From Epithemia pelagica (lineage: Eukaryota > Protista > Bacillariophyta), in assembly GCA_946965045.2 (NCBI GenBank), contig OX337236.1, positions 2,728,001-2,792,000 of the forward strand: 64,000 nucleotides of DNA. The letters are read 5' to 3'. The position numbers were made by a program, and so were the translations under genes. Of the stretch, positions 57,670-63,130 are shown in pieces. Under the pieces are notes generated by a model. It had not been told where the DNA came from, searched no databases, and saw nothing but the letters and a program-made list of their open reading frames with translations. The first letter of the stretch is position 1, and the number at the start of each line of letters is the position of its first letter.

Positions 57670-58770
57670 ATGTCGTCCGATTCCATCATCGTTGTTGGAG
57701 CTGGAAGTGCGGGCATTATAGCCGCAAGGGATCTAGTCCGAGCCGGATATACGGACGTTCGAATCCTCGAGGCATCTGACCGATACCTTGGACGTCTACG
57801 CAAAGACGACGACTTCGTGGATTTTCCAATCGACCTAGGTGGTCAATGGGTAACGGGCAATACCTCTGTGTTGGATGAGATCATCGATGACCCCAATACG
57901 GACATGACCATGGCGCTCATTCCGAATACTATGGACGTTTTTCTTTACCTTCCAAATTTGGAACGACAGGTACAAATCGATAAAGCAACCGACATTATCG
58001 CAAGATCGGATGACAAGTTTGTTGGAAATGCGACCTACTATGATTTCTTCAACACGTACCTGGTACCAGACGTGATTGGTAACATGGAATTGAATTGTGC
58101 GGTTCAAAGCATCAATTATTCTAACGACGATTCGATCACGGTGGAATCGTCATGCGGTGCATACCTGGCTGACCATGTAATTGTCGCGGTTCCTTTGAAA
58201 ATCTTACAGGATGATGACATCTTTTTTGAGCCGGCATTGCCCAGAAATAAGCTTCGTGCGCTACGTACTGCAACATGGGCGGACGGAATCAAGGTATTCA
58301 TTGAGTTCGACGAGCACTTCTTCGAAGATCGGTTATTTCAGGCGATCGATGACTTCTGGAACTACGGTGCGGAGAGTCGCTATTTCTGGGATGAATCATT
58401 TGGTGAATATACGGACAGGTTTGTCTTGGGAATGCTAGTGGTCGGAGAATTAGCTAATGAATATATCCAAAAAAGTGACGAGGAAATTGTTGTTGCAGTC
58501 TTAGAGGACCTCGACGAAATCTTCGATGGTCAGGTAACACCCAGTTATTTGCAGCATGTCGTCCAGAATTGGTCAATGGAGCCTTACGTGCGTGGTTTGT
58601 ATTCGTTCTACGCACCATCGGAGATCAGTTTACAAAGAACTCTCCGAGAACCAATCCAAGATTGTCTTCATTTTGCTGGTGAATATATCCCCATGGATAT
58701 CACACATTACGGCTATGCCGACGGAGCTGCGTTATCGGGCCGAAGCGCGGCAAGTGAGATAATCCTCTAA
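57670..58770 (+). CDS. Flavin-containing amine oxidoreductase (Amino_oxidase family)
   Basis: IIVVGAGSAG (Rossmann), ILEASDRYLGR, DLGGQW, LHFAGE and GAALSG motifs. Intronless. Confidence 0.9.
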   Translation: MSSDSIIVVGAGSAGIIAARDLVRAGYTDVRILEASDRYLGRLRKDDDFVDFPIDLGGQWVTGNTSVLDEIIDDPNTDMTMALIPNTMDVFLYLPNLERQVQIDKATDIIARSDDKFVGNATYYDFFNTYLVPDVIGNMELNCAVQSINYSNDDSITVESSCGAYLADHVIVAVPLKILQDDDIFFEPALPRNKLRALRTATWADGIKVFIEFDEHFFEDRLFQAIDDFWNYGAESRYFWDESFGEYTDRFVLGMLVVGELANEYIQKSDEEIVVAVLEDLDEIFDGQVTPSYLQHVVQNWSMEPYVRGLYSFYAPSEISLQRTLREPIQDCLHFAGEYIPMDITHYGYADGAALSGRSAASEIIL

Positions 58771-59219
58771 TTTGAGCGTCAAAAAGAAAATTGTGATGGA
58801 ATACTCCAATACATGCGCAGTCACAGCAGATACTTTTCTTTTGAAGAATCTGTATGGGAGTAGTACAAAACCATTCTTTTCTAGTAGAGAGGCACACTCC
58901 AAGCCAGTAAAACAAATCACATCTTGTCCCTTTGTCGTTGTTGTAGTGTTTGTTTCTATTTTGTGTTGTTTGACTTTTCTTTTGTCATTTTTTGGGACTC
59001 AACTATTCCTACTATCAGTGGGACTCAAAACGGTTTTTACGCAGGCGACAAAGGGCGAATCCCCGAAAATGAGTCAGATCTCCGATGCGGTCTGTGCAGC
59101 CAGCCAAAGTCACCGCCTTCACGACAGGGATCATGTGTTTTCTTTCTTTGTATTTATATCAAAGATATACGAGCAAAGGTATCTTATTCACTGTTCTTCA
59201 TGGGTAAAGGTCTCACTCA

Positions 59220-61766
59220 ATGCCATCAACGCACGAGGCAGCAATAACCACCATTTTTGAAGCGGAGAGACCGCAATCAACGCAACAGCACGATAGTAAT
59301 TATGGTGGTGCTACAGCGGGCAACAATAACTCATTGGTTGTCGGTCCATACAAGGAAAAAGAAGACAAAGAGTCGAGTGGAAGAGCAATCCTATGCGGTC
59401 AGCAGCACCAGCTTGAAGGAAAGAGCGACACCAATCCATCATGCACGACACGAAGTCATGTGTCAAACTGCATATCTCCCATCGGTAGACACATTGGTCT
59501 GACCAGCAACAGCAGCAACAAGAAGACACCAATCATCAATCCATACAAGAAGAGAAAGGCGGACACTATTATTATGAGTGAGAAGCGACACTGTCGTACG
59601 AAACATCAGGAAGAGGATCATGTTGAAGTGAGGAATGCGTTCAATCAACCGGTCAATGCGAATTCCCAACGACGAAGCAACAATCATCATGCGTCATCCA
59701 AATCTTCGATGAGAACGATGTTGGATGTTGTATGGTTGAAACGAGATGTTCGTTTGCATGATCATGGACCATTCGCTGAGATTTCACGTTCATCGAAACC
59801 ATTTTTGATCCTGTATATGTACGAACCTGATCAATTATCCGAGCCAACCGTACATGGATCACATCTTCGATTCATTCATGAAGGACTGATTGATCTAGAC
59901 AATCGCTTTAATGTTGAATTTGGCCATGACGGCAATAACAAGGAGGTGCAAGAGAAGAAAGCTAAGAGTAGATCTGCTTCTTTTAAGGCACTGACCATAT
60001 GTCACAGTAATGCAATTGCCACTTTGAATGCCATTCATGAAAATTGCAATTTTTGTGTTGGACGTCTGCTCGCGCACCAGGAGACTGGTCACTGGCAATC
60101 TTACATGAGAGACAAGGCTGTACGAAAATGGTGTCGTTCCAGAAACATTCCTTTCATCGAATACAATCAAAACGGTGTGACAAGGTGTTTGAAATCACGT
60201 GATGATTACTCGAAAAAATTCAAAGCCTTCATGTCAATGCAACCATATGCTACGCTATACATCACCTCGGGGCTTCTTGAGCGATTGGTGGTCTTACCTG
60301 ATCTACCAGGATTTATGTCAACAGATTTTGAATCGCACTTGAATGAAATGTCTGAGATTGCAGTTGAGCAACGGTTGGATCTTCCCGACCGACAACAACA
60401 GGGCGGAGAAACGAAAGCACTTTCTACTCTGAAATCTTTTCTACAAGACCGTGGCTCAAATTTTTCTTCCAATATTTCCTCGCCGAACACAGCATGGACA
60501 TCATGCAGCAGGCTTTCCCCGTACTTGAGCTGGGGAAATATATCATTGAGAATGGTATTCAATCGATTATCAGAGCGGCAAGAGCAATTGAGAACACTGA
60601 AAAAACAAGGAGGGGATATTGGCAACTGGTTGAAATCTTTGCAAGCCTTTTCCTCAAGGATCCATTGGCGTTCTCATTTCATTCAAAAATTGGAAACCGA
60701 ACCAATGATGGAAAAACGTGATTTATGTCCCGCTTATCAACCATTACGTAGACAAGATGGTGACTGGAATTCCAAACATTACGAGGCATGGAAAGATGGA
60801 GTGACTGGCTTTCCTTTTGTTGATGCCTGTATGCGTTGTTTGTCAAAACATGGATGGTTGAATTTCCGTATGAGAGCCATGCTAGTGTCCTTTGCAACAT
60901 ACAATCTATGGTTGGATTGGAAAGGTGTTGCACCACATCTGGCCAGGCACTTTTTGGACTATGAACCAGGGATACACTATCCTCAGCTTCAAATGCAAGC
61001 AGGTTGTACTGGGATCAATGCCATGAGAGTATATAGTGTTACCAAGCAAGGAAAAGATCAGGATCCGAGTGGTATATTCATCCGAAAATATGTTCCTGAG
61101 CTGTTTAGAGTTCCTGACAAATACATCCATGAACCCTGGAAGATGCCGGCATCGGAACAAATCAAGTGCGAAACCTTGATAATCACTTACATTGAAAAAG
61201 AATCATCATCAACAGCGAGAGTAAATGCAGATGGATCATCGTGGAACACATACCCGGAACCCATTGTCGACGAGAAAGAGACCGCTAAAATCGCAAAATC
61301 CAAAATCGCTGGAATCCGAAAGCTTGAATCAACAAAAGTGATGGCAAATCAAGTTTTCCAAAAACACGGTAGTCGTAGTAGGAGGGATGGAGATGAAATG
61401 AAAGGAAAACCATCAAAAGTTGGCTCTTCTGGAGTTGAAGAGCAAGCACAAAAAAAACCTGGGAAACAGCAACCTAGAATCTGTTCCTATTTCAGTGGTA
61501 GCAAATGCAGCGACAATGGGAAAACAGTCATGATCACTGCCACAAAGAGCAGTAGACATAAACATCCATCCATAGTTGGAAATGATGCTGTTGAAGAAGG
61601 ACAAATCTCTGATCAAGATGTTGCTAAAACGCCGTCATTCCCGAAGAAACGGGCAAAAAAGAAAGATAATTCTTCATGTTGGGCATGCCATGTTTGCACT
61701 TTCCTGAATGATAAGCCATTGGGACTAGCATGCAGCATTTGTGGTGAGCCCAGAAAGATCTGCTGA
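59220..61766 (+). CDS. Cryptochrome/photolyase-family protein with C-terminal PIP-like motif and NZF/RanBP2 zinc finger
   Basis: VVWLKRDVRLHDH, SRLSPYLSWG, TGFPFVDACMR, GWLNFRMRAML and QDPSGIFIRKYVPEL motifs. The tail has QPRICSYF and WACHVCTFLN-x7-CSIC. Confidence 0.92.
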   Translation: MPSTHEAAITTIFEAERPQSTQQHDSNYGGATAGNNNSLVVGPYKEKEDKESSGRAILCGQQHQLEGKSDTNPSCTTRSHVSNCISPIGRHIGLTSNSSNKKTPIINPYKKRKADTIIMSEKRHCRTKHQEEDHVEVRNAFNQPVNANSQRRSNNHHASSKSSMRTMLDVVWLKRDVRLHDHGPFAEISRSSKPFLILYMYEPDQLSEPTVHGSHLRFIHEGLIDLDNRFNVEFGHDGNNKEVQEKKAKSRSASFKALTICHSNAIATLNAIHENCNFCVGRLLAHQETGHWQSYMRDKAVRKWCRSRNIPFIEYNQNGVTRCLKSRDDYSKKFKAFMSMQPYATLYITSGLLERLVVLPDLPGFMSTDFESHLNEMSEIAVEQRLDLPDRQQQGGETKALSTLKSFLQDRGSNFSSNISSPNTAWTSCSRLSPYLSWGNISLRMVFNRLSERQEQLRTLKKQGGDIGNWLKSLQAFSSRIHWRSHFIQKLETEPMMEKRDLCPAYQPLRRQDGDWNSKHYEAWKDGVTGFPFVDACMRCLSKHGWLNFRMRAMLVSFATYNLWLDWKGVAPHLARHFLDYEPGIHYPQLQMQAGCTGINAMRVYSVTKQGKDQDPSGIFIRKYVPELFRVPDKYIHEPWKMPASEQIKCETLIITYIEKESSSTARVNADGSSWNTYPEPIVDEKETAKIAKSKIAGIRKLESTKVMANQVFQKHGSRSRRDGDEMKGKPSKVGSSGVEEQAQKKPGKQQPRICSYFSGSKCSDNGKTVMITATKSSRHKHPSIVGNDAVEEGQISDQDVAKTPSFPKKRAKKKDNSSCWACHVCTFLNDKPLGLACSICGEPRKIC

Positions 61767-63130
61767 AAAAATGAATTAGGAGTGAAACGCAATTCCATGG
61801 TCATGCATGTTAAACATTCCTCAGTGACTAAATCTTTCTTGCCATGATTCCTGGATTATGGTCCAAACAGCCCAGTGCTTCAGGGATTTCCTTCATGACT
61901 TCTAAGTCAAGCTGCATCTCACGCCAGCCCCAGCCAAAGACCAGCGTCAGATCAATTTGGTAGTACTGTGAATTTTGAAGACGAAGATTTCACGAAGATG
62001 GTGTTACTTGATCAAAGCGATGAGATTGAATAAAAGGATCAAAATCAAGCCACTTTGGAATCAAGCAGCAAATCATAATTTGTTGTCATAATTTGAGCAA
62101 TACTTGAGTTGTCACACATATGTATTGTAGTTTAGGAAGCACATGTATGTTGCATAGTCTCTGCAGTTAGAAATCCAGTTTGCAGTTTGAAATGATACAA
62201 GCCTTGTGCCAATGTGCAGAGCAACAACTTGGCAGGAATAACTTCAATCCTTTGATGAGTTTTTCTGATTTTTCTTCCTGTGCTTTTCCAAACAAGTCTT
62301 TTTCAAGTGCTGATCCTATTCTATGGAGTGATGAAACATTATGCATAATCATACGGTTGTAAGACTACGAGAATATCTCAAGGGCCGGTACCATGTTTGA
62401 AGTTAAAATGATGAGACACAAGAAAGGAAAGCAATGAATGATAGTGCCAAAATGATGAGACAGAAGAAAACAATGCAATGAATGAAAGAAAGAATAGATA
62501 TTTATTTTAACTGTCTCTACTTATCCACATCACGCATAGTTTGCACTATCCGTGACTTCGCGGGGACTGAGGACTCGCTCAGACGGGAGTCTGATTGGGG
62601 TATCAATTGGGATGGGGTTAGGAATCGTGTCTTCTGAATGTTGAATATTTGTGGCATAATTTTGAGAAAGGATTTTTGGCGACATGGGAGAGGGTCGTGA
62701 AGAGGGGGTTGGAATGGCGAGGTTTGAAGAGTGCGGAGCGGATGTCGGGGACGGAGTAACGAGGTTAGTACGGAGGAAAGTACGGTTGTTTGGCAGATTT
62801 ATTTACAAACGTAATGGGGAGAATCAAACGGGATACTTTGATGGACAGATTTATGTATTAGAAAATAATAACTGGGCAGCATGATCAGGTGTGAGTTTTC
62901 ACCGGTATGGTTTCTCTCATGGCCATTGTAACAAGGAACAATTACCTGTGAGTGGTTGAGTCAAATTGATACACAGATATGGATCAATGTGAGGGGACCA
63001 AGCAAGATATCATGTATTGAGGGTTTGCAGACTAAGGACAGACCATGGAGGTCTCAAACAAGGAAGGTTAGACATAACCTGATCACCTCAAGATGACCAC
63101 ATGCGTACTTGCAAACCACCTCACCGGGAA

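What the first reader, a model, noticed from the sequence alone, without database searches (positions are those of the whole stretch)
59220..61766. Photolyase with a PIP box plus a ubiquitin-binding-type NZF finger: possible light repair at ubiquitinated PCNA
Seen: the tail after the FAD domain carries QPRICSYF (61470-61493), a match to the PIP consensus Q-x-x-[ILM]-x-x-[FY]-[FY]. It ends in WACHVCTFLN-x7-CSIC (61680-61742) with the TF dipeptide, and basic NLS-like patches flank the core. Established: PIP plus a ubiquitin-binding zinc finger is how Y-family polymerases and Spartan dock on ubiquitinated PCNA at stalled forks, and TF marks ubiquitin-binding NZFs. Inference: this bacterial-type photolyase may be recruited to replication-blocking UV lesions, a coupling I do not know to have been described.
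Basis: partly seen in the sequence, partly recalled or inferred. Interest (0 to 1): 0.8.

Follow-up and report, generated by a model that had tools for sequence, protein, structure and literature searches.

The report
Photolyase relative tethered to DNA clamp
A diatom gene encodes a light-sensing flavoprotein of the poorly understood NCRY class whose tail carries a conserved sliding-clamp (PCNA) docking motif and a ubiquitin-binding zinc finger, and its bacterial and archaeal relatives end in clamp-binding motifs too, which suggests that this whole class works on DNA at replication clamps.

Summary

Both are conserved:
- 110 of 119 orthologues end in the finger. Thr is invariant, Phe/Tyr occurs in 108/110, and the hydrophobic residue in the second CxxC in 110/110. 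That is the NZF ubiquitin-binding signature.
- A relaxed PIP motif (Q-x-x-I/L-x-x-h-F/W/L) sits about 27 residues after a conserved KHGSR helix. It is found in 60/102 linkers against 0.6 in shuffles, with variants in the rest.
- Prokaryotic relatives carry, at the aligned position, C-terminal beta-clamp motifs (QLSLF, QLSLDL...) or Q-x-x-L-F in marine group II archaea. Counts are 29/31 and at least 64/120, against under 1 by chance.

The core is not a classical photolyase. It belongs to the NCRY/NewCRY class (VcCry2-like): the CPD-binding E, N, M and W are invariantly R, F, A and M, and the proximal Trp is lost.

The protein probably starts at M167 (59718), so the N-terminal basic patch is probably not translated.

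Clamp and ubiquitin docking is well supported. Light repair is not shown. I found no paper describing these tails. The earlier scan notes returned for this genome did not cover this gene.

The parts
59220..59717 (+). In-frame upstream extension of the ORF (codons 1-166), probably 5' leader and not part of the protein.
   Evidence: Public model P0001 and most orthologue models start at the equivalent of M167. No Pfam hit. No RNA-derived contig lies between 58957 and 59611.
59718..61766 (+). Probable coding sequence of the NCRY-class protein, 682 aa plus stop, without introns.
   Evidence: AF2 model mean pLDDT 86.4, pTM 0.82. RNA contigs cover 59612-62100 in pieces.
59718..61376 (+). Photolyase-homology region (alpha/beta domain plus FAD domain) with two packed C-terminal helices ending in KHGSR (61362-61376).
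   Evidence: Pfam PF00875 and PF03441. pLDDT above 95 and helices 519-550 in the model. Generic CPF fold, at most 23% identity to any solved chain.
60657..60995 (+). Span holding the NCRY signature residues of the flavin/substrate pocket (ORF numbering): R480, F549, A553, H586, L590, M592. They replace E. coli photolyase E274, N341, M345, N378, W382, W384.
   Evidence: Alignment to 1dnp_A. R, F, H and M are invariant (80/80), A is 79/80, and position 590 is L in 63/80 and otherwise mainly I, V or M, across eukaryotic, bacterial and archaeal members. Same R/F/A/M replacement reported for NCRY in bioRxiv 10.1101/717249.
61377..61679 (+). Disordered linker between the core and the finger.
   Evidence: pLDDT below 50 for model residues 570-582 and 594-651. 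Length and sequence vary among orthologues.
61470..61493 (+). PIP-box-like clamp-binding motif QPRICSYF (ORF residues 751-758).
   Evidence: Relaxed motif in 60/102 orthologue linkers against 0.58 (max 4) in shuffles, with variants at the same place in the others. The Q column is at least 90% conserved and aligns with prokaryotic clamp motifs. Position 4 is I/L in 91/91 and position 8 is F/W/L. The model has a short helix at residues 588-592.
61644..61664 (+). Basic patch KKRAKKK, which looks like a nuclear localisation signal, directly before the finger.
   Evidence: Sequence. Similar KKR/KRxK patches precede the finger in many orthologues. Function is inferred.
61680..61742 (+). NZF-type (RanBP2-fold) C4 zinc finger with T827-F828 and I840, the ubiquitin I44-patch-binding signature.
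   Evidence: phmmer finds HOIP NZF1, RYBP, NPL4 and TAB2. The orthologue profile finds HOIP NZF1 at 1.4e-7, plus TAB2, TRABID, HOIL-1L and NPL4. Pfam Zn_ribbon_RanBP in 34/43 orthologue fingers. T 110/110, F/Y 108/110, hydrophobic residue 110/110. The AF2 finger superposes on NZF structures at 0.5-0.8 A over about 26 residues.

Best explanation
The gene encodes a nuclear flavoprotein of the NCRY/NewCRY class of the cryptochrome/photolyase superfamily. A flexible C-terminal tail docks it on the sliding clamp.

Shown here:
- The core has the NCRY pocket, with R, F, A and M in place of the CPD-binding E, N, M and W, an invariant His next to the flavin, and no proximal Trp.
- The tail carries a conserved PIP-like motif and a terminal NZF finger with the ubiquitin-binding Thr-Phe/hydrophobic signature.
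- Bacterial and archaeal members end, at the aligned position, in beta-clamp-type (QL[SD]LF, QLxLxL) or Q-x-x-L-F motifs.

Inferred:
- The Q-x-x-I-x-x-h-F motif binds the PCNA pocket.
- The NZF adds avidity for ubiquitin on or near PCNA (for example K164-Ub after fork stalling), as in ZRANB3.
- This places the flavin domain on template DNA beside a stalled clamp. There it acts in a light-dependent way on a substrate other than a duplex CPD, most plausibly a UV lesion in single-stranded or junction DNA that excision repair cannot handle.
- The diatom lineage added the ubiquitin reader to an older clamp tether.
For: Class:
- Pfam domains.
- Alignment to E. coli photolyase.
- R480, F549, H586 and M592 in 80/80 family members and A553 in 79/80.
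- The same replacements are described for NCRY, and loss of E274/N341 for NewCRY.

NZF:
- PDB hits are to NZFs.
- Pfam RanBP finger in 34/43 orthologue fingers.
- Signature conserved in 110/119 orthologues.
- The fold model matches NZF structures.
- NZF definition from PMC11372445.

PIP-like motif:
- 60/102 linkers against 0.58 in shuffles.
- Fixed position, median 27 residues after KHGSR.
- Q column at least 90% conserved across 80 sequences.
- A short helix is predicted on it within a disordered linker.

Prokaryotes:
- 29/31 long-tailed relatives and at least 64/120 bacterial proteins end in clamp motifs, against under 1 in shuffles.
- MAFFT aligns their Q with the diatom Q.
- Beta-clamp consensus from PMC9690074.

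Precedent: ZRANB3 uses PIP + APIM + NZF on polyubiquitinated PCNA (PMC6116012).

Against a signalling-only role: V. cholerae VC1392 is blue-light induced, but a triple CPF knockout leaves the blue-light transcriptome unchanged (PMC5241685).
Against: - No binding was tested.
- Position 7 of the motif is usually M, S, L or A rather than aromatic, and in the Thalassiosira-like group (named members are Skeletonema, Cyclostephanos and Thalassiosira) the motif is Q-x-S-L-L-x-S-W. It is therefore a non-canonical PIP, and PIP-like motifs can bind partners other than PCNA.
- The window's own finger does not reach Pfam's threshold on its own.
- The NZF could read other ubiquitinated chromatin proteins, as RYBP reads H2A-Ub.
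- The pocket lacks the residues needed for CPD repair, and VcCry2 is cited as inactive in repair assays.
- The Bacteroidota subclade lacks the clamp tail (1/44).
- Whether Q-x-x-L-F binds archaeal PCNA is unknown.
- I ran no control on the C-termini of other photolyase classes.
Confidence: 0.55

Rival explanations
1. One reading: an active CPD or (6-4) photolyase is recruited by PIP + NZF to mono-ubiquitinated PCNA and photoreverses replication-blocking dimers.
For: The docking modules are conserved. The pocket is invariant across three domains, so it is under selection for some activity. PMC5241685 states that both V. cholerae CRYs are ssDNA photolyases.
Against: E274, N341, M345 and W384 are replaced by R, F, A and M, W382 is lost, and there is no His-His of (6-4) photolyases. 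PMC7736829 and PMC9016551 cite VcCry2 as lacking repair activity. The statement in PMC5241685 rests on a paper about DASH cryptochromes (my own recollection), so it is doubtful for VcCry2.
Confidence: 0.2
2. It is a light-signalling cryptochrome, and the tail serves regulation rather than repair. Options are PCNA-coupled degradation (PIP degron), ubiquitin-dependent turnover, or reading of ubiquitinated histones in the manner of RYBP.
For: NCRY/NewCRY was proposed to be signalling-only. RYBP and YAF2 NZFs are among the hits. The window motif has a Lys at +4.
Against: The PIP-degron signature (TD plus basic +4) occurs in 0/91 orthologues. Bacterial members have plain beta-clamp motifs and no ubiquitin system. 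The V. cholerae CPF triple knockout does not change the blue-light transcriptome.
Confidence: 0.15
3. The motifs are chance matches or drifting low-complexity tail sequence without function.
For: A single strict PIP match in a 212-aa tail is not rare. The linker is otherwise poorly conserved.
Against: Both motifs are conserved in position and signature over roughly 100 divergent orthologues and across domains, far above the shuffle controls.
Confidence: 0.04

Closest known systems
NCRY / NewCRY class of the photolyase-cryptochrome superfamily (VcCry2 of Vibrio cholerae, 'PtNCRY')
   Same: Two-domain photolyase-homology region. The CPD-contact residues E, N, M and W are replaced by R, F, A and M. 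C-terminal extensions have been noted. Function is unknown (PMC7736829, PMC9016551, bioRxiv 10.1101/717249).
   Different: The papers I could read describe the extensions only as variable, and call NewCRY bacterial/haloarchaeal and signalling-only. Here the extension is a clamp-binding motif in bacteria, marine group II archaea and diatoms, plus an NZF in the eukaryotic clade.
ZRANB3 (human annealing helicase/translocase)
   Same: It combines a PIP box with an NZF ubiquitin reader, which target it to polyubiquitinated PCNA at stalled forks (PMC6116012; PMC11372445).
   Different: ZRANB3 is a SNF2 ATPase/HNH nuclease and also has an APIM. Here the catalytic module is a flavoprotein, and I did not search for an APIM.
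Y-family TLS polymerases, Spartan, SNM1A, FAN1, WRNIP1
   Same: Same logic of a clamp motif plus a ubiquitin-binding zinc module in a disordered C-terminal tail. In bacteria, Pol II, IV and V carry C-terminal QL[SD]LF-type motifs, as the bacterial NCRYs do.
   Different: They use UBZ3/UBZ4/UBM rather than NZF, and they are polymerases, proteases or nucleases.
Class I CPD photolyase, (6-4) photolyase, DASH cryptochrome, plant-like CryP
   Same: Same overall fold (Foldseek target-normalised TM 0.7-0.8). FAD-contact residues such as D372, R342, R344 and W338 are kept.
   Different: At most 23% identity. CPD-binding residues and W382 are missing and there is no HHLARH. NCBIfam scores are far below the cut-offs for PRK10674, DASH, plant CRY and 8-HDF types. 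The CryP motifs MWQNxG and WRDLAY are absent.

Membership tests
NCRY / NewCRY (VcCry2-like) CPF class | Photolyase-homology region with alpha/beta and FAD-binding domains | tested here: met
   PF00875 and PF03441. Confident CPF fold.
NCRY / NewCRY (VcCry2-like) CPF class | CPD-contact residues E274, N341, M345, W384 (E. coli numbering) replaced by R, F, A, M | tested here: met
   R480, F549, A553 and M592 from the alignment to 1dnp_A. R, F and M are 80/80 and A is 79/80 in the family alignment. Criterion.
NCRY / NewCRY (VcCry2-like) CPF class | Direct sequence kinship to VcCry2 (VC1392) | not tested
The link rests on the signature residues and on the papers equating NCRY, NewCRY and VcCry2.
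NZF (Npl4-type) ubiquitin-binding zinc finger | RanBP2-type C4 zinc-ribbon fold of about 30 residues | tested here: met
   W-x-C-x2-C-x11-C-x2-C. PDB NZF hits. PF00641 in 34/43 orthologue fingers, though the window's own is below threshold. AF2 plus Foldseek give rmsd 0.5-0.8 A to NZFs.
NZF (Npl4-type) ubiquitin-binding zinc finger | Thr-(Phe/Tyr) after the first CxxC, plus a hydrophobic residue inside the second CxxC | tested here: met
   T827-F828 and I840. Among orthologues T is 110/110, F/Y 108/110, and M/I/V/L 110/110. Definition from PMC11372445.
NZF (Npl4-type) ubiquitin-binding zinc finger | Binds the ubiquitin I44 patch | not testable with these tools
   Needs binding assays or complex modelling.
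Canonical PIP box (Q-x-x-[ILMV]-x-x-[FYH]-[FYH]) | Q1, hydrophobic 4, aromatic 7 and 8 | tested here: inconclusive
   The window sequence QPRICSYF fits fully. In orthologues Q1 and I/L4 are kept and position 8 is F/W/L, but position 7 is mostly M/S/L/A. As a family feature it is a non-canonical PIP.
Canonical PIP box (Q-x-x-[ILMV]-x-x-[FYH]-[FYH]) | Binds the PCNA interdomain-connector pocket | not testable with these tools
   No multimer modelling or binding assay was available.
PIP degron (CRL4-Cdt2 substrates) | T-D at positions 5-6 and a basic residue at +4 | tested here: not met
   0/91 orthologues have both. The window has C-S at positions 5-6.
Class I CPD photolyase | E274, N341, M345, W384 lesion contacts and the W382-W359-W306 triad | tested here: not met
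   Four contacts and W382 are replaced, while W359 is kept. PRK10674 scores 136 bits against a cut-off of 506.
Eukaryotic (6-4) photolyase | Catalytic His-His in the W-I-H-H-L-A-R-H motif | tested here: not met
   The window has W-L-N-F-R-M-R-A at that place.
Bacterial beta-clamp-binding motif (in prokaryotic relatives) | C-terminal QL[SD]LF pentapeptide or QLxLxL hexapeptide | tested here: met
   QLSLF, QLNLF, QLDLF, QLSLDL, QLALDL, QLSLPL and others in at least 64/120 bacterial proteins (shuffle mean 0.57) and in 29/31 long-tailed loci. Consensus from PMC9690074.

The most novel reading that the evidence does not exclude
NCRY/NewCRY, about 8% of the photolyase-cryptochrome superfamily and so far without a function, is a family of sliding-clamp-tethered, light-driven DNA enzymes. 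They act on template lesions at stalled replication clamps in bacteria (beta clamp), archaea and diatoms (PCNA). Diatoms have coupled the enzyme to damage-induced ubiquitin signalling through an NZF. Earlier negative repair assays would then have failed because the clamp, or the right single-strand/junction substrate, was missing.
Probability: 0.25. Interest if true: 0.9.

Novelty: new variant of a known kind. Interest (0 to 1): 0.78.

Why it matters
Direct photoreversal and replication-coupled damage tolerance are normally treated as separate pathways. A flavoprotein of the photolyase fold carrying the same clamp-plus-ubiquitin address label as translesion polymerases and ZRANB3 would link them. 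The clamp motif is conserved from bacteria to diatoms, so it gives the large uncharacterised NCRY/NewCRY class a concrete, testable partner (DnaN or PCNA). It also gives a reason to repeat repair assays on clamp-loaded, single-stranded or junction substrates. For diatoms, which replicate DNA under strong light, it suggests a lineage-specific way to handle UV lesions met by the fork.

Tried and rejected
- **Strict PIP pattern.** It matched only 6/120 orthologues, which at first looked like non-conservation. Reading the tails showed a relaxed motif at a fixed place.
- **Plant-like CryP (PCRY-like).** Rejected: its motifs MWQNxG and WRDLAY are absent.
- **Class I/III CPD, DASH, plant CRY and 8-HDF types.** NCBIfam scores are far below the cut-offs.
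- **(6-4) photolyase.** Rejected: no His-His.
- **PIP degron.** 0/91 orthologues.
- **The 848-aa model with an N-terminal NLS.** Rejected in favour of a start at M167.
- **Pfam on the single finger.** No hit. The orthologue set and the PDB profile were needed.
- **Foldseek on the 34-aa finger.** Only weak E-values because of its size, although all the top hits are RanBP2/NZF fingers.
- **Gene neighbourhoods of two prokaryotic loci.** No repair genes.
- **Naming the taxa of the basal eukaryotic clade.** Failed because the sources give no names.
- **Literature.** Searches for photolyase with NZF, PIP or clamp motifs, and for VcCry2/NewCRY/NCRY, found no description of these tails. Only open-access PMC and bioRxiv were searched.
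- **Earlier scan notes.** The look-ups on PCNA returned nothing on this gene.
Full report
**Observation**

The window holds an uninterrupted ORF at 59220-61766 on the + strand, 848 codons. Pfam finds the two domains of the photolyase/cryptochrome superfamily: DNA_photolyase at residues 170-230, and FAD_binding_7 at 477-696 with E 1e-63. The tail carries QPRICSYF at 61470-61493. It ends in W-A-C-H-V-C-T-F-L-N-x7-C-S-I-C at 61680-61742, preceded by KKRAKKK at 61644-61664.

**Gene model and expression**

- The public model of this very gene (P0001, 682 aa, two substitutions) starts at M167, which is 59718.
- Most orthologue models also start about four residues before the W[LF]KRD strand.
- Contigs from marine metatranscriptomes, two of them poly(A)-selected, lie on 59612-62100 in pieces. 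None lies on 58957-59611.
- I therefore take 59718 as the likely start.
- Contigs cannot show a transcript end, so this point is probable rather than proven.
- With that start nothing precedes the core, so I saw no sign of organelle targeting; no targeting predictor was run.

**Which class the core belongs to**

NCBIfam models for E. coli-type, DASH, plant CRY and 8-HDF photolyases all score far below their cut-offs. No solved chain is more than about 23% identical.

In the HMMER alignment to E. coli photolyase (1dnp_A), residues fall into two groups:

| E. coli residue | Window protein |
|---|---|
| W277, W338, R342, R344, W359, D372 | kept |
| E274 | R |
| N341 | F |
| M345 | A |
| N378 | H |
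| W382 | L |
| W384 | M |

The His-His of (6-4) photolyases is replaced by N-F.

I aligned 80 sequences: 62 eukaryotic, 15 bacterial and 3 archaeal. R480, F549, H586 and M592 are present in all 80 and A553 in 79. Position 590 is L in 63 and otherwise mainly I, V or M.

This is the signature published for the 'NCRY' group, where E, N, M and W are replaced by R, F, A and M, and a 'PtNCRY' is mentioned (bioRxiv 10.1101/717249). It also fits 'NewCRY', which is about 8% of the superfamily and lacks E274 and N341. NewCRY was said to occur only in bacteria and haloarchaea, and to be credible only as a light-signalling protein, because VcCry2 binds FAD (PMC7736829; PMC9016551).

The protein is therefore an NCRY, not a classical photolyase. 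It is also not the plant-like CryP, whose motifs MWQNxG and WRDLAY are absent.

**The finger**

- The last 46 residues alone find ubiquitin-binding NZFs in the PDB: HOIP NZF1, RYBP, NPL4 and TAB2, at E 5e-4 to 5e-3.
- A profile of 43 orthologue fingers finds HOIP NZF1 at 1.4e-7, followed by TAB2, TRABID, HOIL-1L, NPL4, RYBP and YAF2.
- 34 of the 43 fingers match Pfam Zn_ribbon_RanBP. The window's own finger does not reach the threshold.
- An AF2 model of the finger (pLDDT 85) superposes on NZF structures at 0.5-0.8 A over about 26 residues. Foldseek E-values are weak for so small a domain.
- NZFs are defined as RanBP2-fold fingers with a Thr-(Phe/Tyr) motif plus a hydrophobic residue inside the second CxxC (PMC11372445).
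- Of 119 orthologues, 110 end in the finger, a median of six residues before the C-terminus. Thr is present in 110/110, Phe/Tyr in 108/110, and Met/Ile/Val/Leu in 110/110.

**The PIP-like motif**

The strict consensus matches only 6/120 orthologues. Read by eye, however, the tails share a motif at one place, such as QPKISSMF, QPKIKDAF, QLRINDLF and QPGIQSFF.

- A relaxed pattern hits 60 of 102 linkers, against 0.58 (maximum 4) in 500 shuffles.
- The remaining linkers carry variants at the same spot, such as QQSLLKSW in the Thalassiosira-like group (its named members are Skeletonema, Cyclostephanos and Thalassiosira), QGNIRSML and QPGIESFL. Several have a second x-x-I/L-x-S-F-F-like motif nearer the finger.
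- Over the 91 orthologues picked by a looser pattern that fixes Q at position 1, a hydrophobic residue at position 4 and F/Y/W/L/M at position 8, position 4 is I (66) or L (25) and position 8 is F (57), W (18) or L (16). Position 7 is mostly M, S, L or A. The motif lies a median of 27 residues after the KHGSR helix.
- As a family feature it is a non-canonical PIP. The window's copy happens to be canonical.
- The PIP-degron signature is absent (0/91).

**Prokaryotic relatives**

The core finds relatives of 36-41% identity over its whole length. They include marine group II archaea, SAR116, Alphaproteobacteria, Planctomycetota, Bdellovibrionota, Chloroflexota and many Bacteroidota. All share the D-Y/F-E-P-G-I-H...Q-M-Q pocket motif.

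- Members that keep the KHGSR helix continue with a basic linker and end in a clamp motif. Every group II archaeon ends in Q-x-x-L-F at the very C-terminus. Bacteria end in QLSLF, QLKLF, QMSLSL, QLTLAL and similar. The count is 29/31, against 0.03 in shuffles.
- A second search with a bacterial profile returned 120 proteins. At least 64 end in QL[SD]LF or QLxLxL types, against 0.57 in shuffles, and many of the others are near variants.
- QL(S/D)LF at the C-terminus is the beta-clamp-binding consensus (PMC9690074).
- In the joint alignment, the Q of these motifs falls in the same column as the Q of the diatom motif. That column is at least 90% conserved.
- The Bacteroidota subclade has a shorter tail without the motif (1/44), which serves as an internal control.
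- A quick maximum-likelihood tree puts the eukaryotic sequences in one clade (SH-aLRT 100), with the archaea as weakly supported sisters (87) and the bacteria apart. The careful search did not finish and the root is arbitrary.

**Structure**

The AF2 model of the 682-aa protein gives the following:

- pLDDT above 95 for the core.
- Two helices (519-550) packed on the core and ending in KHGSR.
- A linker with pLDDT below 50.
- A short helix exactly on I-C-S-Y-F (model residues 588-592).
- A folded finger with pLDDT 74-84.

This is the anatomy of a globular enzyme on a flexible leash with two docking elements.

**Mechanism and its rivals**

*What is shown.* The class of the core, the NZF signature, and a clamp-type motif conserved at one tail position in three domains of life.

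*What is inferred.* The motif binds PCNA (DnaN in bacteria). The NZF binds ubiquitin on or near PCNA. The flavin domain then works on DNA beside the clamp.

*Closest precedent.* ZRANB3 uses PIP, APIM and NZF to bind polyubiquitinated PCNA. TLS polymerases, SNM1A, FAN1 and Spartan follow the same logic with UBZ or UBM modules (PMC6116012).

*Repair versus signalling.*
- A repair function is attractive, because a lesion in single-stranded template cannot be excised.
- It is not supported by the pocket, which lacks the CPD contacts.
- Secondary citations say VcCry2 lacks repair activity. One paper says the opposite.
- A purely transcriptional signalling role fits poorly with beta-clamp motifs in bacteria.
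- It also fits poorly with V. cholerae data. VC1392 is blue-light induced, yet a triple CPF knockout leaves the blue-light transcriptome unchanged.

*Confidence.* I put clamp/ubiquitin docking with unknown light-dependent DNA chemistry at 0.55. The full photolyase reading gets 0.2, a regulatory or turnover reading 0.15, and chance under 0.05.

**Novelty**

The NCRY/NewCRY class and a diatom member are known. Their extensions are mentioned only as variable. I found no paper linking any photolyase or cryptochrome to PIP boxes, clamp-binding motifs or NZF fingers. This holds only within open-access PMC and bioRxiv.

I file this as a new variant of a known kind. It offers a concrete functional lead for a large uncharacterised class.

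**Limits**

- No binding or multimer modelling could be run.
- VcCry2 itself could not be fetched.
- The taxa of the basal eukaryotic clade are unnamed.
- No control was run on the tails of other photolyase classes.
- The RNA evidence comes from sparse metatranscriptome contigs of related strains.

Noticed in passing
window 57670-58770 (+): The gene directly upstream encodes a 366-aa flavin-containing amine oxidoreductase (Pfam Amino_oxidase, E 1.4e-48). RNA-derived contigs reach the window at about 58800-58956, just downstream of it (58800 is where the laid stretch begins), at higher depth than on the NCRY gene.
   Followed up: partly
window 59220-59717: 166 in-frame sense codons with no stop lie upstream of the probable start. 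They are Ser/Asn/Lys-rich and hold a KKRK patch. They match no family and no RNA contig covers them. Some orthologues (P0019-P0038 group) do have 50-94-aa N-terminal extensions, so a longer isoform is not excluded.
   Followed up: partly
L012:6133-7140 (-) and L003:4517-5764 (-): A histone-deacetylase-family (Pfam Hist_deacetyl) gene lies next to or near the NCRY gene in both an alphaproteobacterial and a marine group II archaeal locus. This may be coincidence.
   Followed up: no
Loci L016, L018, L020, L026-L028, L030-L033 and other Bacteroidota loci: The Bacteroidota subclade of NCRY keeps the invariant pocket but has a shorter tail (ending ...HVNKxx) without KHGSR or a clamp motif (1/44). 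The tether is therefore not universal in the class.
   Followed up: partly
Proteins P0042, P0048, P0033, P0097; P0005, P0008, P0067, P0110: Some orthologues carry the PIP-like motif twice (for example QTSIKAMF repeated about 25 residues apart). Others have an extra x-x-[IL]-x-S-F-F motif close to the finger, which suggests multivalent clamp binding or a second partner.
   Followed up: no
Family alignment A2, window residue H586 (60975-60977): The residue facing flavin N5 (Asn in photolyases, Asp in plant CRY, Cys in insect CRY, from my own knowledge) is an invariant His in all 80 NCRY sequences. I do not know of another class with His here. It may set an unusual flavin redox or protonation chemistry.
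   Followed up: partly
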